Below are positions 1,461 through 32,465 of a stretch of 64,000 nucleotides of DNA, one piece after another. Below the pieces are notes generated by a model. It did not search any database. It had not been told where the DNA came from and saw nothing but the letters and a program-made list of their open reading frames with translations. Both the position numbers and the translations under genes were made by a program. This DNA is from Macrostomum lignano (Eukaryota). How positions within the stretch are numbered: the stretch's first letter is position 1; each line of letters starts with the position of its first letter. The DNA is taken from assembly GCA_002269645.1 (NCBI GenBank), contig NIVC01000010.1:1302001-1366000 (forward strand), in the 5' to 3' direction.

Positions 1461-1982
1461 TAAGTTGTTTATTTAAATGCTTCCATTTAAGGTCACCAGC
1501 CAAATTCTACATTCAAGCTTCCATTGCTGTGCAAGTGTCTTTTTATTGTTTTTTTAACAATTGTAAACAAAGGTGGTGGTCATTGTTGTTTAATTTCTGA
1601 GCAGTCGAGTTTTATGAGATTCTTGGTTTAGGACTTTGCGATTTCATTTATTATTTATGTTTTGTTAGTGTGCGTACGAGGATATTATTAACATTATATA
1701 TAAAATGTTTTATATATTCCGGCCCTATAACGACCGTTCGTTTTCGTCTTCCATGTCATTTTCAGTTTGCCTTTTTTGACAGCCACTATCCCGTGATGTA
1801 CCATTGTGAACATGGATGTTTTTTCACAGCCATTTTGCTTGATCTTTGTGTTGTCAGCATCTAGGGAACATTATGAAGTCACGAATTTTTCTTGACACTG
1901 AATTATTATTGGATCTTTTTTGTTTGTGCTGTTTTTCATTTTATTATTTATACCTGTCTAATTCTATCATTGTGTTTAGTGA

Positions 1983-10137: not shown

Positions 10138-10570
10138 GGCACCCACTGAAGGATCAGGGGGAATAGCAAGTAGCACCCGCTGAAGGATCAGGGGGGAACA
10201 GCAAGGAGCACACGCTGAAGGATCAGGGGGAATAGCAAGTAGCACCCACTGAAGGATTAGGGGAATAGCAAGTAGCACCCACTGAAGGATCAGGGGGAAT
10301 AGCAAGTAGCACCCACTGAAGGATCAGGGGGAATAGCAAGTAGCACCCACTGAAGGATCAGGGGGAATAGCAAGTAGCACCCACTGAAGGATCAGGGGGA
10401 ATAGCAAGTAGCACCCGCTGAAGGATCAGGGGGAATATCAAGTAGCACCCGCTGAAGGATCAGGGGAACAGCAAGGAGCACACGCTGAAGGATCAGGGGA
10501 ACAGCAAGGAGCACACGCTGAAGGATCAGGGGGAATAGCAAGTAGCACCCACTGAAGGATCAGGGGGAAT
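10138..10570 (+). repeat. 34-bp minisatellite (AGCAAGTAGCACCCACTGAAGGATCAGGGGGAAT) ending ~60 bp before the NSFL1C ATG
   Basis: Tandem units read directly. Confidence 0.93.
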
Positions 10571-10629: not shown

Positions 10630-13174
10630 ATGGACTCCGAGAAGATTTCCACATTCATGTCGGTGACATCGGCGGACGCAGAGCGCGCCCGCGCCTACTT
10701 GGAGGCCGCCCAGGGCGATCTGGACGCCGCCGTTGCGATGTTCTTCGCCGCAGGCGAGGAATCCGCCGAAGGTCAGCAGCCGCCGCCGATGAACACTTCG
10801 GCAAAAGCCACGGCGGTGGGAGCTGCCGAGGATCCGAGGAACCCGGCCTCCAGACCGCAAGAGAGGCAGCAGACAGCGGCTAGCGGCGGTCGTTTTGTCA
10901 CCATGGACGCGCTGAGGTCACGAAAAGGTCACGGCGGCGGCGGCGGCAGCGACGCTGAAGATCCTGACAGCGACGAAGATGATGGAGCTCAAGCGTTCTA
11001 CGTTGGTGGCTCTGAGAAAGGCGGCGGACAGCAGGTATTGACCCAGCTAGCGATGACCCAGCTGTTGACCCATCTAGCGATGAGCCATGTGTTGATCCAG
11101 CTAGCTGTTGACCCAGGTGTAGACCCAGCTAGCGATGACCCAGCTGTTGACCCATCTAGCGATATGCCACGTGTTGATCCAGCTAGCTGTTGACCCAGGT
11201 GTAGACCCAGCTAGCGATGACCCAGGTGTAGACCCAGCTAGCGATGACCCAGGTGTAGACCCAGCTAGCGATGACCCAGGTGTAGACCCAGCTAGCGATG
11301 ACCCAGGTGTAGACCCAGCTAGCGATGAACCATGTGTTGATCCAGCTAGCTACTGACCTAGCTGTTGACCCAGGTGTAGACCCAGCTAGCGATGAGCCAG
11401 GTGTTGACCCAGCTAGCAATGAGCCAGGTGTTGACCCAGCTAGCGATGACCCAGCTGTTGACCCAGCTAGCGATGACCCAGTTGTTGACCCAGGTTGCGA
11501 TAGCCCAGGTGTTGACCCATCTGTCAGTGGTCATACATTAATACAAACCGAGCACAAAGTTGACCCAATCACCATGCTGATCTAAGTATCATGCTGACCC
11601 AAGCACCATGCTGATCTAAGTATCATGCTGACCCAAGCATCATGCTGACCAAGCATCATGCTGACCCAAGCATCATGCTGACCCAAGCACCATGCTGATC
11701 TAAGTATCATGCTGACCCAAGTATCATGCTGACCCAATCACGATGCTGACCCAAGTATCATGCGGACCCAAGCATCATGCTGACCCAAGCACCATGCTGA
11801 CCCAAGCATCATGCTGACCCAAGCACCATGCTGATCTAAGTATCATGCTGACCCAAGTATCATGCTGACCCAATCACGATGCTGACCCAAGTATCATGCT
11901 GACCCAAGCATCATGCTGACCCAAGCACCATGCTGACCCAAGTATCATGCTGACCCAAGCACCATGCTGATCTAAGTATCATGCTGACCCAAGTATCATG
12001 CTGACCCAATCACGATGCTGACCCAAGCATCATGCTGACCCAAGCACCATGCTGACCCAAGCACCATGCTGACCCAAGCATCATGCTGACCCAAGCACCA
12101 TGCTGACCCAAGCATCATGCTGACCCAAGCACCATGCTGACCCAAGTATCATGCTGACCCAAGCATCATGCTGACCCAAGCATCATGCTGACCCAATCAC
12201 GATGCTGACCCAAGTATCATGCTGACCCAAGCACCATGCTGACCCAAGCATCATGCTGACCCAAGCATCATGCTGACCCAAGCTGCACCGAGCCGCCAAT
12301 CCTCACCCGCTCCGCACAGGTGCTCGGCCCTCCCGGTTCCCGTCGCGCCGACGCCGGTCGCATAGCAACCAGCCTGTTCGCCTCGGCCCGTCGTCACGGC
12401 GCCACTGAAGTCGGCTCGGCCGACGATCCCGGCCACGGAGCCGCAGGCGGGTTCGCCGCTTTCGCCGGCCTCGGCCTCCGACTGGACGCTGAGCAGCCGG
12501 CTGAGACCGCCGCCGCTGCTTCATCCGCAGCCTCTGCCAGTCAGCAGCAGCCGCAGCAACCGCAGCAGCAGCCGGTCTGTCGAGTGCTGAAGCTGTGGTC
12601 AAACGGCGTCTCCATCGACGCCGGTCCATTGCGCTCGTTCGAGGAGCCGGCCACCAGGGAGCTGCTGCAGGCGGTGGCGCAGGGCCGCGTGCCTGCCGAG
12701 CTGCGCAGCGAGGCGCGCGGCGCTCGCGTGGACCTGCAGCTCGAGGACCACCGGGGCACCGAATATCAAGCCGGAAGCGGCGGCAGCAGCAAGTTCAAAG
12801 CGTTCGCTGGCTCCGGTCAGGTGCTTGGAAGCCCCGCGCCAGCCGCTTCAGTACAGGCTGCCCCCACCGCCGCTGCTGCCGACGCTGGCACAGGCAGTGG
12901 CGGGGCAGCGGCTGTGCCTGTGGACCCCAGCCAGCCCACCACCAACTTGAATGTCCGCCTGCCATCCGGCGGCCGGCCGATGACCGTGACGCTGAACCAG
13001 GCCAGGCACACGGTTGCGGATCTGCGCAGGTTCGTGTCCGCCGAGAGGCCCGAGCTGGCGGACCGGACCTTCGTGTTCCTCACCACCTTCCCCACAGCGG
13101 AGATCGCCAACGAGGAGCAGACGCTGGAAGCTGCTGGTCTGGTGAATGCCGCTGTGGTTGTGAGGATTAAGTGA
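10630..13174 (+). CDS. NSFL1C: p47/NSFL1C (Shp1/UBXN2 family) p97 cofactor; exons 10630-11034 and 12320-13174 (~419 aa)
   Basis: N-terminal UBA-like region (ARAYLEAAQGDLDAAVAMFF). FYVGGSEKGGGQQ|VLGPP spans a phase-0 GT-AG intron. Also SEP domain (LKLWSNG..GPLRSF), SHP box (AFAGSGQVLGS) and C-terminal UBX (PTTNLNVRLPSG..FPT). Confidence 0.93.
11040..11520 (+). repeat. 27-bp (12+15) GACCCAG-based minisatellite in the NSFL1C intron
   Basis: Starts 5 nt after the GT donor. Confidence 0.92.
11560..12282 (+). repeat. 17-bp minisatellite (GACCCAAGCATCATGCT) in the NSFL1C intron
   Basis: Tandem units ending ~35 nt before the acceptor. Confidence 0.93.
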
Positions 13175-13392: not shown

Positions 13393-14492
13393 ATGAAGCT
13401 GCCAGCTAAATAATGGCATGCATAAAAGCTCATATATTTGTTTATTTAACTACGAGTCTAAACTGTCTTCAAAGCGCCTTAATGCTTTGATTTCTTGAAA
13501 AAAATATTGACATAATAATTTCTGCAGTACCTCCCTACTATATGTGTGAAAGGTATATAAATATTCAGTCATGGCATTTTTGTGCTGTCCTGCAAGTCGG
13601 TTAACCCGAGACTTAGCGTAATAATCTTTCTAACCTCTTGTACTTTTCTCTTTGTTACAATTATTCAGTTCGCTAGGCACTTTAAAACAATTCTTTTCTG
13701 TCACTATTTGTCAAGGTTTTTGGAGACCGCTGGTATTCAGTTGTATGAACATCAAATAAACAAATTAATTCGTCAGATTTAAACAAAACTGAACTATTCC
13801 TAAACAAAATTGTCAAAGGAATTTGTGATGTTTATTATTTTTATTGATTGTTTATAACCTGAGGCTAGATATACCGCATTGAGTTACAGAAGTCAGAGTA
13901 TGTATTAAGCTATTGATGCACTTGATGCGGTGACTTACAAAAACACGATGTTCAAAACAGATTCAAAAGTAACAAAAAGTACTCGTAAAACACGCTTGTA
14001 AATTACAAAGTAGAATACCCGAAGCTCTCAACCAATAATACAGATTAAACTAACAGATAAACAATTATTGCTTACACAAACATGATTAGATCCATTTGAG
14101 ACAAGCAGCCATTTTGTCAAGCACATTTTGTCAAGACTAGTTGAGACTTGTTCTAGTTGAAATGCCTTGAACTAATTAATGCCCAAATATCTTGCTTCAC
14201 TTTGGTTCGAAATTCATTTTGGCGCAACGCATTCGGTGACATTGTCTTACAGCCACTATTCTGCCTATTTCGCTGAATCCAGGGCATACTTAAAACCCCA
14301 AACAAATGTGACCAAGAACGGAATCAAGGGTGCTTATCTACTCAGGGGTAACTGATATTTAACTATTTAATACCACTGCTTCAGTGTAGAAACACAAAAC
14401 CAAGTCGCTATCATTTGCATAATAAATAGAAAACAACTGAGTGGTCATCATTGGTACAGCAAAGGATAATCATCAAAAAGCCACTTCCCCAT

Positions 14493-16340
14493 TCAGTCCC
14501 GCAGAAAAAGTACACCTCGAATGAAGGCCCTGCAGATGGGGCAGGTCTTCAGCGACTTGGCGCACACTGAGCAGCAGGCCACGTGACCACAGTCCAGCAG
14601 CATGATGTTCACCTCCTTGTCCATGCACACCTTGCACGTCTTCCAGTCGACCTGCTCACGAAATTTGGGCTGCGTATGATAATTGCCCAACTTCCGTTGA
14701 CAATGCTCATAAGGGTCCTGCGACTGCTTGCGCATGAGGCAGCTCTCGGTGAGCATGAAGTCGAGGAACAACTCCGATGTGGCAAAGTCATCGCCTCGCT
14801 GTCTAAGATGCAGTTCTGTAAACAGTCTCACTTGCAGAGCGGAGAATCCGAGCTGAGTGAGCAGTCTCACAACGGGCAGGTCGGCTCTCGCCTTGATGTC
14901 TCTGGCCTCGACTCTGAACTCGACTCCAGGAGTGACTGCGAGAGCCTCGTTTGCATGACGGTGGCGATACAAGTTACTTAGTTCAATTGTGCTCATTTGA
15001 CTGAGTGCAGCTGTCTGTTGCTGCACGGGAGGCGACAGTCGGTGCACTGCCTGTACAAAGTCGCTGCCTCGCTCCAACAACACGTGAGGACACCGAGGTG
15101 ACCACCTGGCGTGCTCAACCCACACATCATCGTCGCAGCTCCACTCGCTCATGCGAAGTCCGCAGCTGAAGCAGCAGGTCGCTCTCTCGGCTTCCGAGTA
15201 GAAGAAGCCCGCCTTTGCAAGCAAGTACACTGGCTGCTGAACGAGAGCCGAGTGCAGAGACTGCGACCGCGCTTGGTAGGTCTCGAACTGTGCGTGTTTG
15301 GCAGTCACACTCGATGGATCACTCTCGACACTGTGCTGCAGAGCGGACAGGTTCGTGAGCGCTCTCTCGGAGCACGCAGATCTCGCTACTTCGCTCGACA
15401 CTGGAAGCTGAGGACGCTTCATCATGTCGAAAGCGACCAGCTCGTCGTCCACAACGCGTCGTGCATTCGTTCCACGAGTTTCGCGTGTCGCCAGCGCCCA
15501 CTCTTTCAGTCCAGCGAACTCCATCGGTGGTAGCTCAGCGACCAGCTTCATGCTCCAGTCTCCGTTCACCATCAGTGCTGCATCATCTGCAGTCTGATCA
15601 CTGCACTGCACTGCCTCTACCAGCTTTGCTGACCTCGAGGCTCCTTCTAGCTCTCTGTGTTCTCGAGGCACGTTGCCGACCTCGACGAACAGCACGAACG
15701 GACAGGTGGAGAAGTGGCGTCTGTGAGCCTCTCGGACCTGCTCGCCCGCCTCCCAGTCCTTGAGCACACCCTTGCAGAATGCACACTTTACTCTGTCCGA
15801 CTCCTGCAGGTAGAAGAATCCGTCAGCAGCCAGATCCGTCACTGACACCAGGTGAGCCGCTGTGAAGCTGGCATCTGGCAGGTGGAAGGACTGCCACCTG
15901 TTCTCCTCTCGTCTCATGTCCCACAGGTGTTGTGGAATCGAGGCCGGCATTCCACTCGTGTCCCATCGCTGATTGCGGAAGTCCAGAGTCTGCGGCACGG
16001 ATGACGCTCTGCCACCAGGTGTGCTGTTGTTGTAGTACCGCAGTACCTTGCTCTTGCCTGTCTGTGACGCATTCTCGGTTCCGTCAGTTCGCGCGATTGC
16101 ATGATTAGCCGGCTCAGTTCGTGAAGTGCCTCTTTGAAGGTTTTGCAGAAACATCTTCACGCTTTCTTGATCCTCCACCGGCTCAGTTGGATCTTGACTT
16201 GCATCTTTGCTTAGCTGTAGATCGACTTTATCGAATGTTGCCCTACGAACAGATTTCTGCTGCACGGCTTGATGCTTTAAGTAGTTGCTCAGACATTGAA
16301 TTTGCAAAATTTGGTCATTTGGGTGATTGCGGCTGCTCAT
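14493..16340 (-). CDS. Inhibitor of apoptosis, paralog 1 (BIR-BIR-UBA-like-RING), single coding exon, ~615 aa
   Basis: Two BIRs (LAADGFFY..VKCAFC..W..H..C and LAKAGFFY..CFSC..W..EHARWSPRC), a UBA-like segment (LTQLGFS) and a C-terminal RING (CKVCMD..CGH..C..C..CPICR). The preferred ATG at 16340 follows a CAG acceptor at 16349-16351, although the ORF extends to 16436. Confidence 0.9.
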   Translation of the reverse strand: MSSRNHPNDQILQIQCLSNYLKHQAVQQKSVRRATFDKVDLQLSKDASQDPTEPVEDQESVKMFLQNLQRGTSRTEPANHAIARTDGTENASQTGKSKVLRYYNNSTPGGRASSVPQTLDFRNQRWDTSGMPASIPQHLWDMRREENRWQSFHLPDASFTAAHLVSVTDLAADGFFYLQESDRVKCAFCKGVLKDWEAGEQVREAHRRHFSTCPFVLFVEVGNVPREHRELEGASRSAKLVEAVQCSDQTADDAALMVNGDWSMKLVAELPPMEFAGLKEWALATRETRGTNARRVVDDELVAFDMMKRPQLPVSSEVARSACSERALTNLSALQHSVESDPSSVTAKHAQFETYQARSQSLHSALVQQPVYLLAKAGFFYSEAERATCCFSCGLRMSEWSCDDDVWVEHARWSPRCPHVLLERGSDFVQAVHRLSPPVQQQTAALSQMSTIELSNLYRHRHANEALAVTPGVEFRVEARDIKARADLPVVRLLTQLGFSALQVRLFTELHLRQRGDDFATSELFLDFMLTESCLMRKQSQDPYEHCQRKLGNYHTQPKFREQVDWKTCKVCMDKEVNIMLLDCGHVACCSVCAKSLKTCPICRAFIRGVLFLRD

Positions 16341-17364
16341 GACGCTGCCTGAATTTGCTGAAAACAATTTAATTTGCATAATTAAATTGATGGACAAAGT
16401 GAAGCTATTGATTTTGCAATAGTTAGTTGTAGCCACCTAATCTTGTATATATAATATCAAAATATTTTAATATTATGATTTACTTAGCTAGTATACTTTT
16501 ATGAATTTTGATTGGATGAACCTACTAAAGTAACAGTCAACTAATAAGTAACAAAGAAGTGGTCATAAAAAATGAATAAAGTCAAATGAAAATAAAAAAA
16601 CTCTAGTTCGCAACTGTAACTCTTTAAGCACGTGAAACTATTCACTTTTATATTTTGACTTAGTTCCAAAACCTTATTGCTATCTTTGCAGACACGTAAT
16701 ATACGTATGAGTACCTAATTAATACTAAATGGTAATGGCCGGGGTAGCAATACGAGCTATTTTAATCGATTGTTTTCATGTTTTGAATATGCAGAGAAAA
16801 TGTATTTATTCTGAATTTATTTTGAATACTTTCTCAGCAAAATTGAAGACACACCGCTCCTATCTGTAAAAATGTTAATACATATCGATTTCTTTAGGCC
16901 ATATTTATGTAAAAGGCTTTGTTTAACTTATTAATTGTCGTTAATTGCTTACCACCAATTTTGAAACTGTTACCGTATGATTCGACGTAGTGCAGCTAAT
17001 TGAAATTATGATTTTTTTAAGTCTTCATTAGATAGAAGCAGTTGTCAGTAATAACAACACTGTATGTTTTATTCTCTGTTTTATAGCGTAACATACTTTT
17101 AGATGGTGTGCATGTGTATTCAGCTTGGAAAGTATGCGAAAACTAATGTACACACTCGTACATTGGTAGCAAGTTCCCTTTCTGATGAATTAAAACGTAC
17201 ACTAATCTCTAATGCAGGCCAAGGTTTGTTGGTTGTCTATTAATAAACTGCTCAGCAGTGTGTTTGCCTGTGCGCGTACCGCGCTAAACATTGATATTGT
17301 TTGCTGCCCGCACTGAAGTTAATAAAGTTGATGCCCCAGCCCAGCTGTACAAATGCACACTGAG

Positions 17365-17500
17365 GGCGAGCGTTGTTGTTCCAGGCGGTGGTCGAGACCG
17401 CGTCCTGCTGTACAGGGCGAGACCTGGCTACTGACGGACTCGCTCAAAATAGGATCGATCGACACGGCGAACACTGGCCTGCTGAGCGCCGCCATGAAGA
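17365..17500 (+). mobile_element. Short decayed LINE fragment (post-RT region), related to the LINE at 17945
   Basis: Across frameshifts it reads LFQAVVET.VLLY..ETWLLT..GLL.AA, homologous to the 19905-20010 segment. Confidence 0.65.
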
Positions 17501-17944
17501 TTGGCGACTCCAGCTCCAACTCCACCGTACAAGTACATCAGGATTATGACGTTGTAGCTTTTATGCGTGTATACGATGAATTTGTACTTAAATCGTTCTG
17601 GATGCGGATGGATTATGAGGATGGCTTATCCTAGAGCTTAATTTGATTAAGTCTTAAGTCTACCAATCCATGCTTTTTTGACATGTTTAACTGAATGTGC
17701 TTACAGATGTCAATTGTTTAACCTGCTCTGCTGTCTGTCCTGAAATGGTTAATTATATTTTTTCACTACAGTTTTGCCTCCGAGTTCGAACGTAAAAAAA
17801 CCACACAAGATATATTAACCAAGCACATCAGAAATGCACAGATAATTTTTAATAGACAGTGGATGGCGCCTCTGATATTAAAAACTTGTTTGCGCTCACA
17901 GCTCACAGGCTGAGTGCCTGACAGACTAACTGAGCTGTGGTTAA

Positions 17945-20896
17945 TAGCAGCGTTCATCATTGGAGCTCCTTAAAACTGCAAGCGCCTCCAGCCATGGAGA
18001 GAATCACGCGAAAACAACAATACTAAATGCTCAAGTAGATTTCATGGACCACCACGACCTGGTCTCAGCAAACACGCTGTTCAGGAAGCTGCTTCACAGA
18101 TTGGCAACATTTGCTGGCTTTAAACGGCCACTTCTAGAAGAGACTCGCACAGCTCGACCAAGTTGCTGCTTTGCCAGCGAGAACGACGACGAGTGACTAC
18201 CTGCGATACGGTGGTTCCGCTGGCTGTGCGGTCAGACCATAGACTGCTCTACTGCGACCTGCACTTGAAGGACCCGCTATAAAAAACAGCCAAAACGCTT
18301 CTTCCGCGCCCTACGCGACCCGGTTTCAAGTGGCCGCTTCTGTCTGGCATTTGCCGAGGCGCTGGAAGAACGGCCAGATACAACAACCCCAGCCGAGTAT
18401 CCGGACATCAGTGCCGCCATTCAAGCCGCCGCTACCAATACTCTACCGCTGGTGAAGCCAGCAGAAAGGAGTCGGCCAGTGTGGCAGAACGACGAAGTGC
18501 TGCGGCAGGCCCGGCTGACAGTGGAGAGACTGCAGAGGAGCGGACAGCCCGCGGAGAAGGAAGAGGAGACTCTAGCGGAGACATTTGAAGCCCGGCAACG
18601 CACCGCGGTAGAGACCGCTATTCAAGAGATCGGCGTGAGAACGGCACTATTCAAGAGAACGGCACCGCGTGCCGTCTGGTCGGTCGTCAATCAGCTGACA
18701 GGCCGCAAGAGACGCAACGCTCTGAACCTGGCGGGTGACACGCCCGAAGAGAGGCGAAACGAGCTGCGGACCTTCTTCTCTGGTATCGTCAACGCGCCCC
18801 CTCCGCGGCAAAGGGACGACGTGTCATTGCCCACAGAGGTTGAGCTGCCAGAGGAGAGCTCCTTTAACACCAGCCCCATCACCATCGACGAGGTGCTCCA
18901 ACTTGCAAAGAAGACGCCAGGCAACAAGGCTACTGGACCAGACAACGTGCCTGTCGAGGTGCTGCGCCTCCCGCAGGTCGCGCTGGAAGTCACGCCCTGC
19001 TGAGTGGCAGACTGCGCATATCGTCAGGATCCAAAGAAACCAGGTTCCGTCAAGGTCGAAGAACATCGCGGGATTTCGCTAATGTCCTGCACAGCTGAAG
19101 CAATTTAACAGAGTTCTGCTGTCGCGGCTGCAGCCAGTGCTGGACCCGTTCCTCCGGCGCGAGCAAAATGGATTCCGGCCAGGCAGAGGCACCGTGACGC
19201 AAATTCTCGCTCTTGCGTCGAATTCTAGAAGAGGCCTGCATCCACCAGTCGACCATCGTCTGCATCTTCGTAGACTTCCTGAAGGCCTTTGACTCGGTAT
19301 CACGTATTCGAGCAGCTGGTGACGGCTGTGTTAGCTCTGTACCAGGAAACTAGGGCGGCAGTTGTGACACCGGATGGCCTTTCCGACTTCTTCGACACGT
19401 CTTCCGGCATCCTCCAAGGGGACACCTTGGCTCCTTTTCTGTTCGTCCTGGTCCTTGACTGGGTACTGCACACTGGCCTCCCTGACGACTCCAAAGGATT
19501 CTTGCTCTGCCGCAGAACAAGCAGGCGGCACCCCGAGAAGCGACTCTCCGTCCTAGCGCACGCGGACGATCTAGCGCTGCTGCCTAGCACAGCTGAAGGA
19601 GCTCAACTCCTGCTAGACCAGCTGACGGCGGCGGCCGCTGCGATCGGACTGTCCGTGAATACCAAAAAGACGATGGTGCTGACCGTGCCGACGGACCTGC
19701 CAGCTGAGATCTGCCGCTGCACGAACGGGCAGGTGGCGTTGCTGCCCCGCTGCAAAGAGTTCGTCTACCTCGGTGGTCTGGTGCCAAGCATCACGGAGGA
19801 CATGCACGGCGCAGGGCGCTTGCCTGGGGCGCATTCCGCACCATGCGGACTGTCCTCAGAGCCCCGCGCGCTGCCGGATCGGCTGAGAGGGCAGCTGTTC
19901 CAGGCCGTCATTGAAACCGTACTTTAAAACGCTGAAACTTGGACACTGAATGGCCCGCAGGAGCGGCAACTCGACGCCGCTCACGCTGGACTCCTGAGAG
20001 CCGCCTTCGGTGTCCACTACTCGCCGACCGCCACCACCAACACCAGCAATGACGAGTTATACCGACGGCCCAGCTCTCCCGACCCAGCCAGCTGCTGCGC
20101 ATCCGGCGCCTACAGCTGGCCGGCCAGGTCATCCGGGCAGAGCAGTACTGCCCTGAGCCGCTTCAAGACGTGCTGCTGCTATCCCTTCAAGGGGACGCTT
20201 TCATAAGACCTAAATTTCACAACGCCTAAAACCACCACCCTTCACAACGCCTAAATTTCATATCGCCTAAAATATTTGCACGCTCTTTCACATCGCCTAA
20301 ATTTCATAACGCCTAAATTTCATAACGCCTAAATTTCATAACGCCTAAATTTCATAACGCCTAAATTTCATAACGCCTAAATTTCATAACGCCTAAATTT
20401 CATAACGCCTAAATTTCATAACGCCTAAATTTCATAACGCCTAAATTTCACAACGCCTACGACGTAAAATCTTTGTTTCTCTCCTTCACATTCAGTTTTA
20501 AGTGTTGTGAAATTTAGGCGATATGAAGTTTAGGCGATATTAAAGAGCATGCAAATTTTTAGGCGTTGTGAAATTTAGGCGATGTGAAGGAGGCTGCATA
20601 TATTTTAGGCGTTGTGAAATTTAGGCGTTATGAAATTTAGGTGATGTGAAGTCATGTGCTTTAGGCGTTGTGAAATTTAGGTCTTATGAAGCGCCCCCCC
20701 CCCTTCAAGGGCTGCGGCGGCTTGGTCAGGCGAGAAGCCTGCGTTTTGTCGACCTGCTTTTAAGAGACGCTGAAATCTCCGACCCCCGCGGACTCGCTAT
20801 TCTGCGCAAATCTGCGCTTGCGCGCGCATTTTGACAGCAACCCAACTTAATTGGCTTGCCCAGGGTTGCTGTAGTTTGTTGTTTGTTGTTGTTGTT
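17945..20896 (+). mobile_element. 5'-truncated, frameshifted non-LTR retrotransposon (APE endonuclease + RT, RTE-like), interrupted by a foldback element at 20192-20700
   Basis: APE remnants (DLVSANTLFRK, SDHRLL) and RT motifs (RGISLMS, EQNGFRPGR, FVDFLKAFDS, GILQGDTLAPFLF, HADD instead of YADD). The C-terminus continues after the insertion to TGA 20832-20834, followed by a 3' hairpin and a (TTG)n tail. Confidence 0.88.
20192..20700. mobile_element. Foldback/MULE-like non-autonomous element, ~38-bp TIRs, internal 16-bp repeats, 9-bp TSD CCCTTCAAG
   Basis: Left end GGGACGCTTTCATAAGACCTAAATTTCACAACGCCTAAA is nearly the reverse complement of the right end. TSD at 20183-20191 and 20701-20709. 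Removing the element restores the LINE frame LLLSLQGLRRLGQ. Confidence 0.88.
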
Positions 20897-23724
20897 ATGC
20901 AGCAAATTGTCATACAGTAAAATCATTTCATACAGAGTCGGTTCATAGGATGTAAAAACAAGCAGTTACAGCATGCCAGCAGGCAGTGGAGCGAGCACTT
21001 TGGCATGGCAGTCTGGAACAGCGGCTGCAACTCAGGCTGCCGGCAGCAACCTGTGTTAATCATGCCAACAGCCGCACTTGAGTCGGAGTAGACCACGACC
21101 GAACTGTCATTTAAAAAGGCACTCCAGCGAACCATAGCCAGTAGCGGTACAATACTCGTAGCTTCTTTGTACGTGATATGCTTGTCTTTAAACTTTCCTC
21201 CAGCATCCAGATCCCATGAATTTACATATAGCCAGTCCACCATTCCGCTACCATTGCGCAAAATGGCTCCGCCACCAGCACTGCTCGCATCGGTTTCGAT
21301 GATCCAGCCGTTTGTGCGACTTCTACAAAGCTCAAAATCAGGCAGCTTCAGAGGGCACTTCGCCACCAGAGTAATATACGCACAGTGTCAGCGGACACTC
21401 GCACTTTGTGATGTGGCTTTTCCAGGGCATTAAGCAGGTCGAACAGGGGCCTTAGGAAGTAACTCCCAGCGTGCACTACCTGGACGACCAAGCTGAGCTT
21501 GCCACAAAGCGACGAAAGCTGGCGTTTTGAGAGACGCCTGCGCTGCGAAAAGTTAAGCAGTGTGGTGCGCATTTCCTCACACTTTTCCGCCGGCACACTA
21601 AGAACTCCACGGACAGTATCAATCTTCACACCGAGATACACCAAGCATTGCGTAGGTTCAACCACTTTGTTCCAATTGACACCAAAACCTAACTGGCGAA
21701 CCAGCTTAATCAGCTCTTTCAGAGCTTCCATACACTCTTCCTCGCTCTCGGCCGAAACCAGAAAATCATCTTGGTAAACCGAAATATTGGCCACGCCGCG
21801 TCGCACCATCATCCTCTTGACCACTTGAGTAAGCCGGTAGAAAATCTCGACCGAGGCGTAGCTACCAAAGGGTAGCCGGGTGTCGACAAGCCATGTCAGA
21901 TCACAGTTGCCTTTAAAGCGCCAACCAATGCCGATCGCCTGGTAATCATCCGGATGAATCGCTACGCTTCTGTAAGCTTGCGACAAGTCAAGCTTCGCCA
22001 TGAACCAGCCCTTGCCGATAGAGGCTGCAACCTTCTTGACGGACTCAAACCTGGGGCTCAGCTTCTTCGTATAATGGTCATTTACCGAGTAGCCCGGAGG
22101 CGTGCTGCAGTCATGATTCATGAATAAGCCGAACCTTCCCGTTATCCTTGGGAATAGCTCCCAGAGGGCTGACCATCGTAGGCTTCTTAGGCACAACCAA
22201 ATACCTGCCATTCTCAATCTCTTCCTTAATTTGCAGCTCAACAGCACGATGAAAAGCAGAAGTAGACACGTAATTGGCATTAAAAGTCTCACAAAGCCCT
22301 TTGCCATCAGTAATGCGAAAACCATTTGCGATGCCGTCTAGGATAAAATTCCGATCAGGGTCATTCTCAAGCTCAAAATCCCACGAACAAAGACGCAGGC
22401 GACCCCCTGCTCTACCAACGACAGGATTGTTAAAATTTAAAGCAGGCTGAGCATTAGGCAAAAAGTTTCGGATTAAAACAGAGCATCGCAGACTTCAGTT
22501 TTTTGTCGAATGGTTGGCCTCAGAATGGGTCTCGAAACAGATGCGGCAGACGTGCCGGAATTTGCAGCTCGACCGGAAGCACCCCCGGCGATTAAAGTGC
22601 AAGCAGATCTCTTCTCCGTCTGGCGTTCTGAGGCTCTTGGGATCTATTGGTTTTTAAAAAAGCTGCTGTCGTGGCTGGGGCAATGACTTGCTGACCCCAT
22701 GGTTTGCTGGAGTTCCAGTTCTAATTAAGTGCTTAGCAACGAGTTGGAAAGACTCCTTGCCCCATCGCATGCCAGTTTCAGCTTGCCTAGTGCGGTAGTT
22801 CTCGTCAAAACGGTTCACCTGCGCAAGACCGAAGCCCGCGTCAAACAGCTCGCCAATCTGTATTGAGTAGCGTAGGTAATTCATCAAATCAGTCGTGTCG
22901 GCAGTTCCATTTCTACTAGTCACCAGGGCACCATCCTTGATCATCTGCATCATCAGCCTGCAATTGCCTACCAAATACTGCGCTGCCGTGATGCTATCTG
23001 GATTAGGTTTTCTGCTCTTGTAAGTGATTCGGCCATCAGAACCATTAGCTAGCACCTCTTCCTGCTCAAAGCCGTCGAGGAAATCACGAACCAGTAGAGC
23101 CTTACATCTACCAGAACACTCATTCCGTTCATTGGCCCTGTTCTGTGACAACAATCTATCAAGCAGCTCATTGCCATTATCTTCCTGGTCTAATCCAGCA
23201 TCATCGCACCCATCAGGAAAGTAACTGGGGCCAGCAGGCTTGGCACACTCACCGCGATTCATAGGACGCGTGGACGGACACTCGCGCTGCAAATCTCCGA
23301 TCTCTCTCTTGAGTTGAGTGGCTTCCTTGCGTAGCTGCAACAGTCTGATCTCCTCCGCCTTCGCGATGTCCTCGTCCAGGCCCGCCGCCGACTCCCGAGC
23401 CGCCTCCGTACTGATGTTGTCGTCTGCTTCGGCTTCTTGCTCGGATTGCTTTATGTTCTGCAACAGAGAATCTGTCCACGACTGGTCTGGGGCTGCGAGC
23501 AAGGCTCTGACAAGGTCGGCCTTGTTGCCCCGACTACTTATGTTAGCGTGGGCAAAAAAATCAATACGCACTTGGCGGGTCAGCAACAGCCCGCATTGCA
23601 TTAAATAAACGCCACCCCAGCCGCGGGCACGTGACCAAGGCCCGGCCCACCCCATCCCCCGCACCAACGCACAAGAGCCACGCTCCACTGGTTTAACACC
23701 CAACCAAGCTACGCCCTTTCGGAC
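20897..23724 (-). mobile_element. DIRS/Ngaro-type tyrosine-recombinase retrotransposon remnant: gag-like (22654-23727), RT (21348-22461), RNase H (20923-21366); no YR visible
   Basis: Motifs VSPLGAIPK..KVRLIH/DCS, KLDLSQAYRSV, LPFG, YQDDF, YLGVKIDT, TDAS, HITYKE and YSDS are typical of DIRS-group RT/RH. Frameshifted. Termini approximate. Confidence 0.85.
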
Positions 23725-24081
23725 CATTCATTTACAGTAAGAAGGTCCGCGAGATACGAGTACGCTCGTAAAAGTGCACTTGAGACGTAGTCAAATAAAG
23801 AACATATCTAACATAACGTCTATTCGTGGGCTGTACGTATACGTGGATATGGTAAAATTACCAGTACGAGTACTGTAAATTGAGTTTACGAAACAATGAC
23901 AATATACTCGTATGTTGCTTTAATTGGCAACGAGTCATTGTTGACACACGTGATGCAATAAAACATGATACTAAGGCAGCTGGTACTGAACATATAGATT
24001 CTGTTTGTGTCCCGGTCGAGATACCATATTTACTATCCGAACGGCGAGACTAAATAGATCGAGTTAAGAACTTTAGAGTCA

Positions 24082-24325
24082 ACCAATCAGCGGCTGAGGG
24101 CGAGGGCAAACAGAGAGGCCCGTCAACCAATCAGTGGCTGAAGGGTGAGGCAAACAGAGAGAGAGGCCCGTCAGCCAATCAGCGGCTGAGGGTGAGGCAA
24201 ACAGAGAGGCCCGTGAGCCAATCAGCGGTGCTGAGGTTGAGGCAAACAGAGAGAGAGGCCCGTCAGCCAATCAGCGGCTGAGGGTGAGGCAAACAGAGAG
24301 GCCCGTCAGCCAATCAACGGCTATA
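24082..24325 (+). repeat. ~42-49-bp tandem repeat with six CCAATCA boxes
   Basis: (A/G)CCAATCAGCGGCTGAGGG(T/C)GAGGCAAACAGAGAGGCCCGTCA repeated about six times. Confidence 0.85.
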
Positions 24326-25400
24326 GAGGGCGAGGGGTCGTTGCAGCGTGGACCGAAATCGGTCTAAAAAGAATTAGAGAAAAGTAGGTTTCTTAGGCGG
24401 TTTTAGTGAGTATAGTGGGTTTCGCCACTCACAGCTCAACTTTAATTTGAACAATGTTAACTTTAAAAAATTAAAACACAACTCACAAAAAACCGAGTAA
24501 ATTGTACTTTAGTACATATTACTTCAATACATAGTTTAGAGATTTGCGTTAAAGTTGCAACACAGCAGAACATAAAATGTTTAATGTGCCTGAATAAATA
24601 AGTGAATAGTCAAGAGCTCCATCTTGATCGTATGCGCTCGCCGTTATAAAATAAAATAAAAAATTGGCGAGTTGCTACTCGTAGGTCTCTGTGATCAGCT
24701 ATACAGAATAGAATAGAATTTCTAACAATTAGATAAGGGAGCTTGGCCGTCTCAGTTTGTCTTTATTATTACTTTATTGGAATCTGTTAGCCAATATCCA
24801 GCACACCAAAACACGGTGTGAGGACTCGGCCTCATGCCAACCGTTGATGGTGACAGCGGCTGGGCCTAAGAGTGACCGCGAGGCGACCGAGACCCGCCAT
24901 ACGACGCATCCTGGATTCCTGGCATCTGATATCGGGCATCACATTATTTTTCTCAATTGCTTCTTTTTTATTGCTGTCCTCCTCACTTCCCAAAAACTAA
25001 TGCAACGTATAACTCTCATTCCGAATGTTTAAAGGCCAAAATTAAAGTGCTTTTTACAAGCGTACATTGCAGTTTCAAAGCGGAAATTTCTTTAAACAAA
25101 GGACTACTTAAGAGTAAAGGAAGAATAAAGGGGTTACACTTATAACAGTGGCAAAATTCTGAAAGTATCTCTGAACCAGCCGCCGAGACACCGAGCATAG
25201 ACTACAAAGTAGACAAGAGTAAACAGAAAATCAACGAGATACCAGCATCAGGGGTTTTAAAACTGAAGGCTACATGAGCGAACAAACATTGTACATAAAG
25301 ATTGTACATAGTGCACTCTACATGCATAGTAAATAGAAAACAACTATTGTGCAAAGGGCCATTGGTAATACAGGAATAACATCAAAAAACACTTTTTCAT

Positions 25401-27374
25401 TCAGTCCCGCAGAAAAAGTACACCCCGAATGAAGGCCCTGCAGATGGGGCACGTCTTCAGCGACTTGGCGCACACTGAGCAGCAGGCCACGTGACCACAG
25501 TCCAGAAGCATGATGTTCACCTCCTTATCCATGCACACCTTGCACGTCTTCCAGTCGGTTGTGTCTCGGGGTCTCGGCTGTTGGTTCAGAGACTCTCGAA
25601 TCTGAGACATCCTGCTCTCGAAGAATGCCTCCGGGTCCTGCGACTGCTTGCGCATGCGGCGACTCTCGGTGAGCATGAAGTCGAGGAACAGCTCCGATGA
25701 GGCAAAGTCATCGCCTCGCTGTCTGAGATGCAGCTCTGTGAACAGTCTCACTTGCAGAGCGGAGAATCCGAGCTGAGTGAGCAGTCTCACAACGGGCAGG
25801 TCGGCTCTCGCCTTGATGTCTCTGGCCTCGACTCTGAACTCGACTCCAGGTGTGACTGCGAGAGCCTCGTCTGCGCGACTGCTGCGGACTGCGGACCCGT
25901 CGACAGTCGCAGCACCAGCTGATGCAGTTGAGTCCGTCTGTACCAATGCAGTGTGACGCTGAGCAGAGGCGCCACAAGTCGGGTGCTGCACGGGAGGCGA
26001 CAGTCGATGCACAGCCTGTACAAATTCGCTACCTCGCTCCAACAACACGTGAGGACACCGAGGTGACCACCTGGCGTGCTCAACCCACACATCATCGTCG
26101 CAGCTCCACTCGCTCATGCGAAGTCCGCAGCTGAAGCAGCAGGTCGCTCTCTCGGCTTCCGAGTAGAAGAAGCCCGCCTTTGCAAGCAAGTACACTGGCT
26201 GCTGAACGAGAGCCGAGTGCAGAGACTGCGACCTCGCTTGGTAGGTCTCGAACTGTACGTGTTTGGCAGTCACACTCGATGGATCACTCTCGAGACTGTG
26301 CTGCAGAGCGGACAGGTTCGTGAGAGCTCTCTCGGAGCACGCAGATCTCGCTACCTCGCTCGACACTGGAAGCTGAGGACGCTTCATCATGTCGAAAGCG
26401 ACCAGCTTATCGTCCATAACGCGTTCTGCATTCGTTCCAAAAGTTGCGCGTGTCGCCAGCGCCCACTCGTTCAGTCCAGCGAACTCCATCGGTGGTAGCT
26501 CAGCGACCATCTTCATGCTCCAGTCTCCGTTCACCATCACTGCTGCATCATCTGCAGTCTGATCACTGCATTGCACTGCCTCTACCAGCTTTGCTGAACT
26601 CAATACTCTTTCCGGCTCTCTGTGATCTCGAGGCACGTTGCCGACTTCGACGAACAGCACGAACGGACAGGTGGAGAAGTGGCGTCTGTGAGCCTCTCGG
26701 ACCTGCTCGCCCGCCTCCCAGTCCTTGAGCACACCCTTGCAGAATGCACACTTTACTCTGTCCGACTCCTGCAGGTAGAAGAATCCGTCAGCAGCCAGAT
26801 CCGTCACTGACACCAGGTGAGCCGCTGTGAAGCTGGCATCCGGCAGGTGGAAGGACTGCCACCTGTTCTCCTCTCGTCTCATGTCCCACAGGTGTTGTGG
26901 AATCGAGGCCGGCATTCCACTCGTGTCCCATCGCTGATTGCGGAAGTCCAGAGTCTGCGGCACGGAGGACGCTCTGCCACCAGGTGTGCTGTTGTTGTAG
27001 TACCGCAGTACCTTGCTTTTACCTGTCTGATTCACTGAGTTAGCCGGATTTTGTTCCCTTCGCCTCAGCTGGCTGGCGATTTCGATCCTTTTTTTCGAGA
27101 ACCCGTGTTCCGAAGCCTGGAGTAGATTTGGCAGCAACCCGAAAGTTCGTGAATCCTTTAGAAGAGTGAGAATTTCTCCTTTGCTGGTGCCGTCTGTAGA
27201 AATTTTTAGACCTGTGAGCTCTTCGCAGTTTGCCCTGTTTCTCTCTGCCCCATTCTCCTTTTTTACAGATCTTTCACCAGACTTCAGCCAAGTTTTAGTA
27301 TCCTGGAGATAATATTTCGTTCTTCTGGGGTTTGTTGTTTGCAGCCTTGAGCCTTGGTATTGAAGTTGAGCCAT
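25401..27374 (-). CDS. Inhibitor of apoptosis, paralog 2 (BIR-BIR-UBA-like-RING), 657 aa
   Basis: Same domains as paralog 1 with near-identical BIR and RING sequence. A TAG acceptor lies 3 nt upstream of the ATG. Confidence 0.92.
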   Translation of the reverse strand: MAQLQYQGSRLQTTNPRRTKYYLQDTKTWLKSGERSVKKENGAERNRANCEELTGLKISTDGTSKGEILTLLKDSRTFGLLPNLLQASEHGFSKKRIEIASQLRRREQNPANSVNQTGKSKVLRYYNNSTPGGRASSVPQTLDFRNQRWDTSGMPASIPQHLWDMRREENRWQSFHLPDASFTAAHLVSVTDLAADGFFYLQESDRVKCAFCKGVLKDWEAGEQVREAHRRHFSTCPFVLFVEVGNVPRDHREPERVLSSAKLVEAVQCSDQTADDAAVMVNGDWSMKMVAELPPMEFAGLNEWALATRATFGTNAERVMDDKLVAFDMMKRPQLPVSSEVARSACSERALTNLSALQHSLESDPSSVTAKHVQFETYQARSQSLHSALVQQPVYLLAKAGFFYSEAERATCCFSCGLRMSEWSCDDDVWVEHARWSPRCPHVLLERGSEFVQAVHRLSPPVQHPTCGASAQRHTALVQTDSTASAGAATVDGSAVRSSRADEALAVTPGVEFRVEARDIKARADLPVVRLLTQLGFSALQVRLFTELHLRQRGDDFASSELFLDFMLTESRRMRKQSQDPEAFFESRMSQIRESLNQQPRPRDTTDWKTCKVCMDKEVNIMLLDCGHVACCSVCAKSLKTCPICRAFIRGVLFLRD

Positions 27375-27920
27375 TTGCTACAATGTCTAGCCAGCTGTGT
27401 CCGCCGTGTCTTGGAGTTTTATGATGCACAGGGCTTTCCAAAGACGGATAAATTTGTCGTATTCTTTTCCTGAGTTCTTGAAGAGTACAAACTTTTCTGA
27501 AGTTTTTCTGACTCGGTTTGACCTGGATTGGTTGAGGCGCCGTTGTGGCTGTGACCTGAAATTTTACAAATTTAACTGGTTAAATTAATTAATTAAATTA
27601 TTTAGTTAAATTTACATAATCATACGAAGTAATCAATTGTACTCAGTCCAATCCTCAGTCTAATTGTGATCAAGTCAAAATTCTGACCCCCTGCAGCCAT
27701 TGACCTATCCAAGTGATCCGAAAAACTTTCCCAAACAGGATTTGAAGTAGCGGATTAATTAATTACCTGATTGACTGCAGTCAAATCTTGAGCGGCTTGT
27801 TGCGCGCAGTCTGTATCGACTAGATCCTCTGGATCCGAACTAAAATTCAAAGGAAAATTTGATAGAAAGCAATTGTAGAAATCACTTAAACTAAAAAAAC
27901 AAGCCATATTTTACATGTAG

Positions 27921-32405: not shown

Positions 32406-32465
32406 TATTGTTGTTTTTGCTAACGTATGTCTGTTTGATGTAAACACGTTTTGTTCGTGGGATCA

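What the first reader, a model, noticed from the sequence alone, without database searches (positions are those of the whole stretch)
14493..27374. Tandem IAP paralogs: near-identical BIR/RING domains but wholly replaced linkers and almost purely non-synonymous differences
BIR1, BIR2 and RING are identical in protein, with very few silent changes (about one seen across BIR1). Two linkers are non-homologous but in frame: QQTAALSQMSTIELSNLYRHRHAN versus HPTCGASAQRH...VRSSRAD, and YEHCQRKLGNYHTQPKFREQV versus EAFFESRMSQIRESLNQQPRPRDTT. In the inter-BIR patch every difference I read changes the amino acid, several by 2-nt changes (E/K, V/M, R/E, R/F, E/A, K/N). The 3' flanks are much more diverged than the domains. 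This fits gene conversion of domains plus diversifying selection on linkers, as in immune arms races, for example against pathogen proteases or caspase-cleavage sites.
Basis: partly seen in the sequence, partly recalled or inferred. Interest (0 to 1): 0.72.

Follow-up and report, generated by a model that had tools for sequence, protein, structure and literature searches.

The report
Flatworm IAP gene pair, patchy gene conversion
Two neighbouring intronless apoptosis-inhibitor (IAP) genes of the flatworm Macrostomum are kept about 97% alike in their folded domains by copying between family members, while one copy keeps two short, stable, different linker segments; this is ordinary gene-family evolution, not a shown arms race.

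Summary
Two intronless minus-strand ORFs (14493-16436 and 25401-27374) encode BIR-BIR-UBA-like-RING proteins. Three DNA blocks are about 97% identical. They are interrupted by two in-frame, unalignable linkers and flanked by unalignable N-terminal coding regions and 3' flanks.

The claim of "almost purely non-synonymous" differences fails. The inter-BIR patch has 17 non-synonymous and 6 synonymous differences (dN/dS 0.85). The domain blocks have 20 synonymous and 5 non-synonymous differences. dN/dS over the BIR1-to-BIR2 block is 0.37.

The window is Macrostomum lignano or a very close relative. At least 12 family members were seen, and all but copy A's lineage carry the B-type linkers. A syntenic M. 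lignano locus has the same A+B pair with the same A-type linkers (1 nt difference each). So the linkers are two conserved states, not hypervariable.

Gene conversion is well supported:
- 186 of 351 informative site pairs fail the four-gamete test.
- The two A copies have different mosaic boundaries.
- Two M. lignano homeologs differ by a clustered 0.9 kb tract (P = 6e-13).

Verdict: concerted evolution of a flatworm IAP family, with copy A keeping or having acquired two distinct linkers. Diversifying selection is not supported. Interest is low to moderate.

The parts
14493..16340 (-). IAP_A coding sequence. It is 615 aa from the ATG conserved with the L001 copy. The frame stays open upstream to 16436.
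   Evidence: ORF list. Pfam BIR x2 and RING. Start Met conserved in A_L1.
25401..27374 (-). IAP_B coding sequence, 657 aa, ATG start.
   Evidence: Pfam. Same length and start as M. lignano P0002 and P0067.
16065..16340 (-). A-specific N-terminal coding region, unalignable to B. The B counterpart is 27030-27374.
   Evidence: The frame is open for 124 codons while the other five frames have 6-10 stops. GC 0.43. Predicted disordered.
15021..16064 (-). Shared block 1: pre-BIR1, BIR1 (about 15687-15914), inter-BIR spacer and BIR2 (about 15072-15299). It is 96.6% identical to B 25986-27029.
15441..15662 (-). Inter-BIR variable patch (A residues 259-332; B 26406-26627), where most A/B amino-acid differences cluster.
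   Evidence: 17 non-synonymous and 6 synonymous differences, dN/dS 0.85. Variant states are shared among paralogs, e.g. GASRS vs RVLSS. pLDDT below 50.
14949..15020 (-). A-type linker 1 (QQTAALSQMSTIELSNLYRHRHAN), between BIR2 and the UBA-like block. The B-type counterpart is 25869-25985.
   Evidence: It differs by 1 nt from L001 19321-19392. GC 0.44 vs 0.63 in B. pLDDT below 50.
14712..14948 (-). Shared block 2: a helical UBA-like domain. The B counterpart is 25632-25868.
   Evidence: 10 of 237 nt differ. pLDDT 72-92, helical bundle. It aligns with the PF21290 UBA_BIRC2-3 region of other IAPs. There is no direct Pfam hit.
14649..14711 (-). A-type linker 2 (YEHCQRKLGNYHTQPKFREQV), between the UBA-like block and the RING. 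The B-type counterpart is 25557-25631.
   Evidence: It differs by 1 nt from L001 19630-19692. A faint motif is shared with B-type and with P0008.
14496..14648 (-). Shared block 3: RING finger and C-terminal tail. The B counterpart is 25404-25556.
   Evidence: Pfam PF13920. 4 synonymous and 0 non-synonymous differences. Aligns with the cIAP1 RING of 3t6p.
14416..14492 (-). 3' flank with residual A/B homology. Beyond it there is none. The B counterpart is 25323-25400.
18452..19927 (+). Reverse-transcriptase ORF fragments (LINE-like) inserted between the two IAP copies.
   Evidence: Pfam RVT_1. No match to this stretch was found in the syntenic locus L001.
20923..23727 (-). Retroelement between the copies, with gag-like, RT and RNase H ORFs. 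Calling it DIRS-like is my reading from memory.
   Evidence: Pfam RVT_1 and RT_RNaseH. The same element follows a B-like gene in the M. lignano model P0006.
12320..13174 (+). Last exon of a SEP/UBX-domain gene, tail-to-tail with IAP_A. It serves as the synteny anchor.
   Evidence: Pfam SEP and UBX. The same neighbour occurs in L001.

Best explanation
IAP_A and IAP_B are two real, head-to-tail, intronless members of a Macrostomum family of at least 12 BIR-BIR-UBA-like-RING genes. The family evolves in concert. Ectopic gene conversion repeatedly copies stretches of the roughly 1.6 kb gene body between members, both within and between loci. This keeps the folded-domain blocks 96-98% identical. 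The disordered N-terminal regions and the flanks are not exchanged and drift apart.

Copy A belongs to a separate lineage that is also present at the syntenic M. lignano locus. Its two short disordered linkers are of a different type. Conversion tracts between A and the B-type members stop at these linkers, or products that cross them are not retained. So the linkers persist as islands between converted blocks.

Shown:
- the mosaic structure;
- the reticulate history of the core;
- conservation of each linker type;
- dN/dS below 1.

Inferred:
- the A-type linkers are old, diverged homologues rather than fresh non-homologous replacements;
- the high GC content of the body reflects biased gene conversion;
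- both genes are expressed E3-ligase IAPs.
For: 1. The mosaic has sharp edges. Three blocks are about 96-97% identical and are separated by unalignable in-frame segments.
2. Both A and B occur in the same order, next to the same UBX gene, in M. lignano contig NIVC01000199.1. That A copy has an intact 654-codon ORF and the same A-type linkers.
3. The two A copies differ in mosaic boundary. The proximal 55 N-terminal codons of A_L1 are B-type (15 of 138 nt differ from B_L1), whereas in A_w they are unique.
4. In the UBA block A_L1 is closer to its neighbour B_L1 (3 differences) than to A_w (7).
5. In the core all six copies are 2.1-4.5% apart with no tree structure. 186 of 351 informative site pairs fail the four-gamete test, against a mean of 6 and a maximum of 47 in 500 no-recombination simulations.
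6. B_L1 and B_L4 have 99.3% identical flanks, yet 46 of their 49 coding differences lie in nt 690-1587 (P = 6e-13). Most variant states are shared with other paralogs.
7. Every other family member seen, including the divergent D copy (core dS 0.25-0.29), carries the B-type linkers.
8. GC is 0.54-0.60 in the shared blocks (0.49 in the D copy's RING; GC3 0.54-0.84). It is 0.43-0.46 in the N-termini and A-type linkers, and 0.36-0.42 in intergenic DNA.
9. N-termini of different members keep a faint common motif, and the B and D proximal N-termini are clearly homologous. This fits old paralogs with homogenised bodies.
10. A-type linker 2 shares N..QPK..E..DW-type residues with the distant paralog P0008.
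Against: - A GENECONV-style longest-tract permutation test within the core gave no significant single tract (best p = 0.08).
- Residual homology between A-type and B-type linkers is not significant (p = 0.15 and 0.05). So "old diverged islands" cannot be told apart from "replaced segments".
- Mosaic patterns among roughly 97% identical paralogs can be produced by long-read assembly or consensus errors. 36% of Mlig_3_7 by length is reported to lie in chimeric scaffolds (PMC10733133).
- No transcript evidence for copy A was found. The A-type copy is not annotated in GCA_002269645.1, and no A-type protein exists in the protein collection searched.
- High GC3 could reflect codon usage rather than biased conversion.
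Confidence: 0.72

Rival explanations
1. Copy A arose recently by duplication of a B-type gene. Its linkers, proximal N-terminus and 3' flank were then replaced by unrelated sequence, for example by small deletion plus filler-DNA insertion or by exonised non-coding DNA. No long-term gene conversion is needed to explain the A/B pattern.
For: - The A-type linkers and N-termini have background-like GC (0.43-0.46 vs 0.36-0.42 intergenic).
- No significant similarity to B-type linkers was found.
- B-type linkers are ancestral for the family.
- Core A/B dS (0.065) is about the same as the divergence between the window and L001 (UBX dS 0.073).
Against: - It needs at least four independent in-frame, stop-free replacements in the short interval before the two loci split.
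- No donor sequence was found in the window or in the fetched loci L001-L005.
- The linkers are not a frameshift or inversion of the B-type linker.
- It does not explain the different 5' boundary in A_L1, the reticulate core or the B_L1/B_L4 tract.
- A-type linker 2 keeps family-like residues shared with P0008.
Confidence: 0.15
2. One reading: the linkers and the inter-BIR patch are targets of diversifying (positive) selection in an arms race, for example to escape pathogen proteases or caspase cleavage, while the domains are homogenised.
For: - Amino-acid differences cluster in the inter-BIR patch (17 of the 19 core replacements).
- One pair (A_w/C1) has dN/dS 1.36, from 13 non-synonymous and 3 synonymous differences.
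- The A-type linkers contain no Asp, against three Asp in B-type linker 1 and one in B-type linker 2 (sequence). That would remove Asp-dependent cleavage sites.
Against: - dN/dS in the inter-BIR region is 0.28-0.87 for 12 of the 13 pairs and 0.85 for A/B. That cannot be distinguished from relaxed constraint in a region predicted to be disordered.
- Variant states are old haplotypes shared among paralogs and with the outgroup, not new changes.
- Linkers exist in only two states, and each is conserved: 1 nt per linker between the A copies, and 94-100% among B-type copies apart from the divergent D copy's linker 1 (85-96%).
- B-type linker 2 has dN/dS 0.16 against the D copy.
Confidence: 0.08
3. 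Artefact: the two copies or their mosaic structure result from mis-assembly of alleles or homeologs, or copy A is a decaying pseudogene kept looking intact only by conversion.
For: - M. lignano is a neopolyploid with three subgenomes, and its reference assembly is highly chimeric (PMC10733133).
- Copy A is not annotated in the public assembly.
Against: - The same A+B arrangement and the same A-type linkers occur in an independent assembly at 96.5% identity.
- The A-specific parts cannot be repaired by conversion from B. They are still open in both copies, and the net length difference between them is a multiple of three.
Confidence: 0.05

Closest known systems
XIAP / cIAP1-2 / DIAP2-type IAPs (BIR repeats, UBA, C-terminal RING E3 ligases)
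   Same: - Two BIR domains with the zinc-binding Cys/His pattern.
- A C3HC4 RING that aligns with the cIAP1 RING (3t6p).
- A helical block in the UBA position that aligns with PF21290-bearing IAPs.

   Different: - Two rather than three BIRs, and no CARD.
- The UBA-like block does not reach any Pfam threshold.
- There is a 115-146-residue, copy-specific, fast-evolving N-terminal extension.
- The genes are intronless.
- No function was tested.
Lineage-specific IAP expansions with tandem and intronless copies (oysters, PMC8917759; metazoan survey, PMC13159474)
   Same: Many recent paralogs, tandem intronless copies, and variable inter-domain regions.
   Different: - The host is a flatworm. The 2026 survey reports RING-containing IAPs as lost in Platyhelminthes and did not include Macrostomum.
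- Neither 'gene conversion' (count) nor 'concerted' occurs in the 2026 survey. 'Gene conversion' is also absent from the oyster paper.
Concerted evolution of multigene families by ectopic gene conversion restricted to conserved coding blocks. The classic examples (globin, Hsp70, histone and mouse Naip/Birc1 clusters) are cited from memory.
   Same: - Paralogs are near-identical inside a tract with sharp edges and diverged outside it.
- Site patterns are reticulate.
- The homogenised tract is GC-enriched.
- Tract ends differ between copies.
   Different: Two short internal islands in one lineage escape homogenisation while the blocks on both sides are exchanged. The direction and rate of conversion were not measured.

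Membership tests
IAP (BIR-containing) proteins | At least one BIR domain with the CX2CX16HX6C zinc-binding signature | tested here: met
   PF00653, E = 5e-27, two stretches in each protein. The Cys/His columns are invariant or nearly so in a 28-sequence alignment. PDB BIR hits reach 1e-12.
RING-type IAP E3 ligases (XIAP/cIAP/DIAP-like) | C-terminal C3HC4 RING finger | tested here: met
   PF13920, E = 3.5e-13. Alignment to the cIAP1 RING of 3t6p.
RING-type IAP E3 ligases (XIAP/cIAP/DIAP-like) | UBA domain between the last BIR and the RING | tested here: inconclusive
   No Pfam hit even at E = 10. However, the block aligns with the PF21290 UBA region of Lingula and Lamellibrachia IAPs. AlphaFold2 predicts a helical bundle with pLDDT 72-92.
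RING-type IAP E3 ligases (XIAP/cIAP/DIAP-like) | Caspase or IBM binding, ubiquitin-ligase activity, anti-apoptotic effect | not testable with these tools
   This needs biochemistry or RNAi.
Gene family under concerted evolution by gene conversion | Paralogs far more similar inside a tract than in adjacent sequence, with abrupt boundaries | tested here: met
   Blocks are about 96-97% identical against unalignable linkers, N-termini and flanks.
Gene family under concerted evolution by gene conversion | Phylogenetic incongruence or four-gamete violations within the tract beyond what homoplasy gives | tested here: met
   186 of 351 incompatible pairs, against a mean of 6 and a maximum of 47 in 500 tree simulations.
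Gene family under concerted evolution by gene conversion | Copy-specific tract ends, or clustered differences between otherwise near-identical orthologous copies | tested here: met
   The A_L1 and A_w 5' boundaries differ. For B_L1 vs B_L4, 46 of 49 differences fall in 898 of 1971 nt, P = 6e-13, with flanks 99.3% identical.
Gene family under concerted evolution by gene conversion | Significantly long shared fragments in a GENECONV-type permutation test | tested here: not met
   My own Sawyer-style test on the 1038-nt core gave a best pair p = 0.08. Many short exchanges would weaken this test.
Genes under diversifying selection (arms-race type) | dN/dS above 1 in the variable segment | tested here: not met
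   Inter-BIR dN/dS is 0.85 for A/B and 0.28-0.87 for 12 of 13 pairs. The BIR1-to-BIR2 block gives 0.37. The linkers are saturated and cannot be estimated between types.
Genes under diversifying selection (arms-race type) | Variable segment differs among many paralogs or haplotypes | tested here: not met
   Only two linker states were seen among at least 12 copies. The two A copies differ by 1 nt per linker. B-type copies are 94-100% identical, apart from the divergent D copy's linker 1 at 85-96%.
Processed retrogene | Intronless copy ending in a poly(A) remnant, flanked by target-site duplications | tested here: not met
   The genes are intronless. By eye, no A-run follows the end of 3' homology in either copy. 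Target-site duplications were not searched for.

The most novel reading that the evidence does not exclude
Copy A may be a functionally distinct, regulation-resistant IAP. Both of its disordered linkers are conserved between loci and contain no aspartate, whereas the family-standard linkers contain four. A-type proteins could therefore escape Asp-directed (caspase-type) cleavage between BIR2, UBA and RING. Selection would then keep these two islands from being overwritten by the otherwise pervasive gene conversion. More broadly, the copy-specific N-terminal extensions (open in all 7 copies, fast-evolving, without frameshifting indels) could act as specificity modules of an expanded flatworm IAP repertoire. 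RING-IAPs have been reported as lost from this phylum.
Probability: 0.1. Interest if true: 0.6.

Novelty: new member of a known kind. Interest (0 to 1): 0.3.

Why it matters
For the finding as stated, it matters little. The pattern is the expected footprint of concerted evolution acting on constrained domains next to disordered, poorly constrained spacers. There is no evidence of an arms race.

Two side points have some value:
- A free-living flatworm carries an expanded, actively homogenising family of BIR-BIR-UBA-like-RING genes. A 2026 survey of 312 species concluded that RING-containing IAPs were lost in Platyhelminthes and did not sample Macrostomum. The loss is therefore not phylum-wide.
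- The locus is a compact natural example of conversion tracts that repeatedly stop at two short internal islands. In a neopolyploid with three subgenomes it could be used to measure conversion within and between subgenomes.

It is also a warning for annotation. Copy A is unannotated in the public assembly, and one public protein model (P0006) fuses a B-type gene to the downstream retroelement.

Tried and rejected
1. Frameshift or inversion origin of the A-type linkers. I translated the B-type linkers in all six frames and ran local DNA alignments on both strands with shuffles. Nothing resembled the A-type linkers.
2. A donor for the A-type linkers or N-terminus. A blastn-short search of the window and of loci L001-L005 found only the A copies themselves.
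3. The linkers as introns. All 7 aligned copies stay in frame without stops, and length differences are multiples of three. The public M. lignano protein models P0002, P0003, P0005 and P0067 read straight through the linkers. Copy A lacks an AG at the position where B's linker 1 ends in CAG.
4. The shared 5' homology boundary (codon Q of QTGKSK) as a splice or trans-splice acceptor. Three copies have CAA instead of CAG there, and the upstream frame is open in all copies.
5. Retrogene origin. No poly(A) remnant was seen.
6. Exact-protein look-ups of IAP_A and IAP_B in public assemblies found nothing on record. No transcript evidence could be obtained.
7. Pfam on the UBA-like block and the N-termini at E = 10 gave no hits.
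8. A GENECONV-style longest-tract test was not significant.
9. A PHI-like test of the spatial clustering of incompatibilities was not significant (p = 0.18). Incompatibilities are spread everywhere.
10. A literature search for Macrostomum IAPs found nothing relevant.
11. Whether the window and L001 are homeologs, older segmental duplicates or sister-species orthologs could not be settled. The window shares a 99.9% identical transposon with M. lignano. Yet it is 5-18% diverged from L001, more than the 1.9-2.4% reported between subgenomes (PMC10733133).

Full report
**What is there.** The region holds two long minus-strand ORFs without introns. IAP_A is 14493-16436 and IAP_B is 25401-27374. Each has two BIR matches (PF00653, E about 5e-27) and a C-terminal C3HC4 RING (PF13920, E about 3.5e-13). 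Searches against solved structures hit the BIR and RING domains of cIAP1, XIAP, NAIP and livin.

An AlphaFold2 model was built on a 28-sequence alignment. It gives confident BIR1, BIR2 and RING domains, plus a confident helical bundle between BIR2 and the RING. pLDDT falls below 50 in the N-terminal approximately 130 residues, the inter-BIR spacer and both "linkers". The helical bundle gets no Pfam hit. It does align with the PF21290 "BIRC2/3-like UBA" region of brachiopod and annelid IAPs. The architecture is therefore BIR-BIR-UBA-like-RING.

The two genes lie head to tail, about 9 kb apart. Between them are LINE-like reverse-transcriptase fragments (18452-19927) and a retroelement with gag-like, RT and RNase H ORFs (20923-23727). 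IAP_A lies tail to tail with a SEP/UBX gene (12320-13174).

**Checking the observation.** DNA homology between the copies is confined to two stretches. The first is 15013-16064 vs 25978-27029 (96.6%, 36 mismatches, no gaps). The second is 14416-14954 vs 25323-25874 (86.8%, gapped). A base-level alignment shows three blocks of about 96-97% identity:
- pre-BIR1 to BIR2;
- the UBA-like block;
- the RING.

Two in-frame segments with no detectable similarity separate them. Linker 1 is 72 nt in A and 117 nt in B. Linker 2 is 63 nt in A and 75 nt in B. The first 115-124 codons and the DNA beyond about 80 nt past the stop codon are also unalignable.

The substitution claims are not correct. Nei-Gojobori counts for A vs B are:

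| Block | Synonymous | Non-synonymous | dN/dS |
|---|---|---|---|
| pre-BIR1 + BIR1 | 5 | 0 | 0 |
| inter-BIR | 6 | 17 | 0.85 |
| BIR2 | 4 | 2 | 0.14 |
| UBA-like | 7 | 3 | 0.13 |
| RING | 4 | 0 | 0 |
| whole core (BIR1 to BIR2) | 15 | 19 | 0.37 |

The domains therefore show ordinary purifying selection. Silent changes there are plentiful (dS 0.056-0.13). The inter-BIR spacer shows the 1:3 silent-to-replacement ratio expected for unconstrained sequence. It is not an excess of replacements.

[quoted passage not shown] A 5.5 kb DUF1258 element in the window (45349-50870) is 99.8-99.96% identical to the three copies compared in the M. lignano assembly GCA_002269645.1. Its exact 766-aa protein is on record on 8 contigs. 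The UniRef model P0006 is a B-like gene followed by the same retroelement as in the window. The window is thus M. lignano or an extremely close relative. The exact A and B proteins are not on record.

**The family.** At least 12 members were seen as proteins or loci. Every one except the A lineage carries the B-type linkers. This includes the divergent D copy (P0005/L003), whose core dS to the others is 0.25-0.29. The more distant paralog P0008 (36% identity) has a B-like "FFE" in linker 2. The B-type linkers are therefore ancestral and conserved.

Locus L001 (NIVC01000199.1) is syntenic with the window, in the order UBX gene, A-like copy, B-like copy. Its A-like copy is not annotated. It is nevertheless an intact 654-codon ORF with the same A-type linkers, differing by 1 nt in each. 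In the same comparison the N-terminal coding regions are only 80-85% identical and intergenic DNA 82-90%. The linkers are therefore two discrete, conserved states. They are not hypervariable, and this removes the basis for "diversifying selection on linkers".

**Evidence for gene conversion.**
- In the 1038-nt core the six copies are 2.1-4.5% apart, with paralogs no more distant than orthologous pairs. Of 27 informative sites, 186 of 351 pairs fail the four-gamete test. Simulations on a tree without recombination gave a mean of 6 and a maximum of 47 in 500 runs.
For example, GASRS occurs in A_w, A_L1 and the outgroup D, while B_w and C2 carry RVLSS and B_L1 carries RVLIS.
- The two A copies have different mosaics. 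In A_L1 the proximal 55 N-terminal codons are B-type (15 of 138 nt differ from B_L1). In A_w that stretch is unique. In the UBA block A_L1 is closer to its neighbour B_L1 (3 differences) than to A_w (7).
- The two M. lignano homeologous B genes (L001 and L004) have upstream flanks that are 99.3% identical and N-termini differing at 2 of 345 nt. Yet 46 of their 49 coding differences fall in nt 690-1587 (binomial P = 6e-13). Most variant states are shared with other paralogs. This is a recent tract of about 0.9 kb imported from another family member.
- The exchanged body is GC-rich (GC 0.54-0.60 in most blocks, GC3 0.54-0.84). The non-exchanged N-termini and A-type linkers sit near background (0.43-0.46; intergenic 0.36-0.42). 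This fits GC-biased conversion, although codon usage is an alternative.
- A GENECONV-style longest-tract test within the core was not significant (best p = 0.08). I attribute this to many short exchanges, and it is recorded as a failed test.

**Origin of the A-type linkers.** They are not frameshifted or inverted B-type sequence. No donor was found in the window or the fetched loci L001-L005. Similarity to the B-type linkers is not significant (p = 0.15 and 0.05). A-type linker 2 does share a few positions with both the B-type linker and P0008. The N-termini of different members also retain a faint common motif.

I therefore favour an old, diverged A lineage whose conserved blocks have been overwritten by conversion. 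The islands would be left where homology was too low to carry a tract, or where selection keeps them. The rival is a recent duplicate with several non-homologous in-frame replacements. It needs at least four independent stop-free replacements in a short time and does not explain the other mosaics. I give it about 0.15.

**Other refutation conditions.**
- Introns are unlikely. All 7 aligned copies stay in frame, indels are multiples of three, and the public M. lignano protein models P0002, P0003, P0005 and P0067 read straight through the linkers.
- Mis-assembly of alleles is excluded, because the A+B pair occurs in an independent assembly.
- Expression of copy A is untested.

**Context and novelty.** Tandem and intronless IAP expansions are documented in oysters and other invertebrates (PMC8917759, PMC13159474). 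Concerted evolution limited to conserved coding blocks is a textbook pattern. I found no report on Macrostomum IAPs. The 2026 metazoan survey states that RING-containing IAPs were lost in Platyhelminthes, and Macrostomum is not in its data. This locus is a new member of a known kind. It adds a modest corrective to that statement and gives a clean small example of internal islands that escape homogenisation.

**Caveats.**
- The sample is 7-10 copies, and the counts per block are small.
- The reference M. lignano assembly is reported to be partly chimeric (PMC10733133), so some mosaics could be assembly artefacts.
- The evolutionary relation between the window and L001 (homeolog, older duplicate or sister species) is unresolved. 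UBX dS is 0.073 and non-coding identity 82-90%. Both exceed the 1.9-2.4% reported between subgenomes.

Noticed in passing
window 16065-16436 and 27030-27374; L001, L002, L003, L005: All 7 copies examined keep 116-146 open codons upstream of the shared QTGKSK boundary, while the other five frames carry 1-14 stops. Additional copies in L005 and the protein models P0063 and P0070 have yet other N-termini. These N-termini are mutually almost unalignable and are predicted to be disordered. They look like translated, copy-specific, very fast-evolving extensions.
   Followed up: partly
window 27030-27509 vs L001 9870-10345: The N-terminal coding region of B is only 84.9% identical between the window and L001 (52 mismatches, no indels). 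The 135 nt immediately upstream are 97.7% identical and the gene body 96.6%. The local dS (0.33-0.44) is four to five times that of the body and of the UBX neighbour. This is unexplained. Possible causes are conversion from an unseen diverged B-like N-terminus or local hypermutability.
   Followed up: partly
whole IAP family (window 14493-16436, 25401-27374; P0001-P0008, P0063-P0071): A free-living flatworm has at least 12 BIR-BIR-UBA-like-RING genes. A 2026 survey of 312 species (PMC13159474) reports RING-containing IAPs as lost in Platyhelminthes and did not include Macrostomum.
   Followed up: partly
L001 10001-11974 vs L004 10001-11974: Two M. lignano homeologous B genes have 99.3% identical flanks, yet 46 of their 49 differences lie in coding nt 690-1587. 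Many B_L1 states are unique, which suggests a donor paralog that was not sampled.
   Followed up: yes
L001 17884-19848: The A-type copy in the public M. lignano assembly is an intact 654-codon ORF, but no gene is called there. No A-type protein exists in the protein collection searched.
   Followed up: partly
window 15644-15664 (A codons 263-269) vs 26609-26629: Eight substitutions fall within about 20 nt and define two haplotypes, GASRS and RVLSS. The haplotypes are shared across paralogs, and GASRS also occurs in the outgroup copy. It looks like a clustered multi-nucleotide change, or a micro-conversion, that has since been shuffled among copies.
   Followed up: partly
window 45349-50870: This 5.5 kb element encodes a 766-aa DUF1258/DUF4218 protein. 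It is 99.8-99.96% identical to the three copies compared in M. lignano GCA_002269645.1, and the exact protein is on record on 8 contigs. It looks like a recently active transposon.
   Followed up: partly
window 18452-19927 and 20923-23727: Two retroelement insertions lie between the IAP copies, and no match to them was found in the syntenic locus L001. The UniRef model P0006 (1094 aa) is a chimeric prediction that reads from a B-type IAP into the same downstream element.
   Followed up: partly
window 496-1460, 1980-3258, 6729-7453, 8006-9263, 10139-10570, 11032-12283, 30282-32406, 40367-41062, 42419-44740, 58179-58929, 59271-59778: The window has an unusually dense set of minisatellite arrays (periods 16-46 nt, 12-150 copies each) that together make up a sizeable share of it. 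The GA-rich arrays create long spurious ORFs.
   Followed up: no
L002 (NIVC01003532.1) and L005 (NIVC01000010.1): Further family clusters exist. L002 has two B-type copies head to head about 8 kb apart, and the annotated P0063 lies on the same contig. L005 has two tandem B-type copies. C-terminal tails after CRAFIRG also vary between copies (VLFLRD, SVFIKM, SLFFRE, TVLIKI).
   Followed up: no
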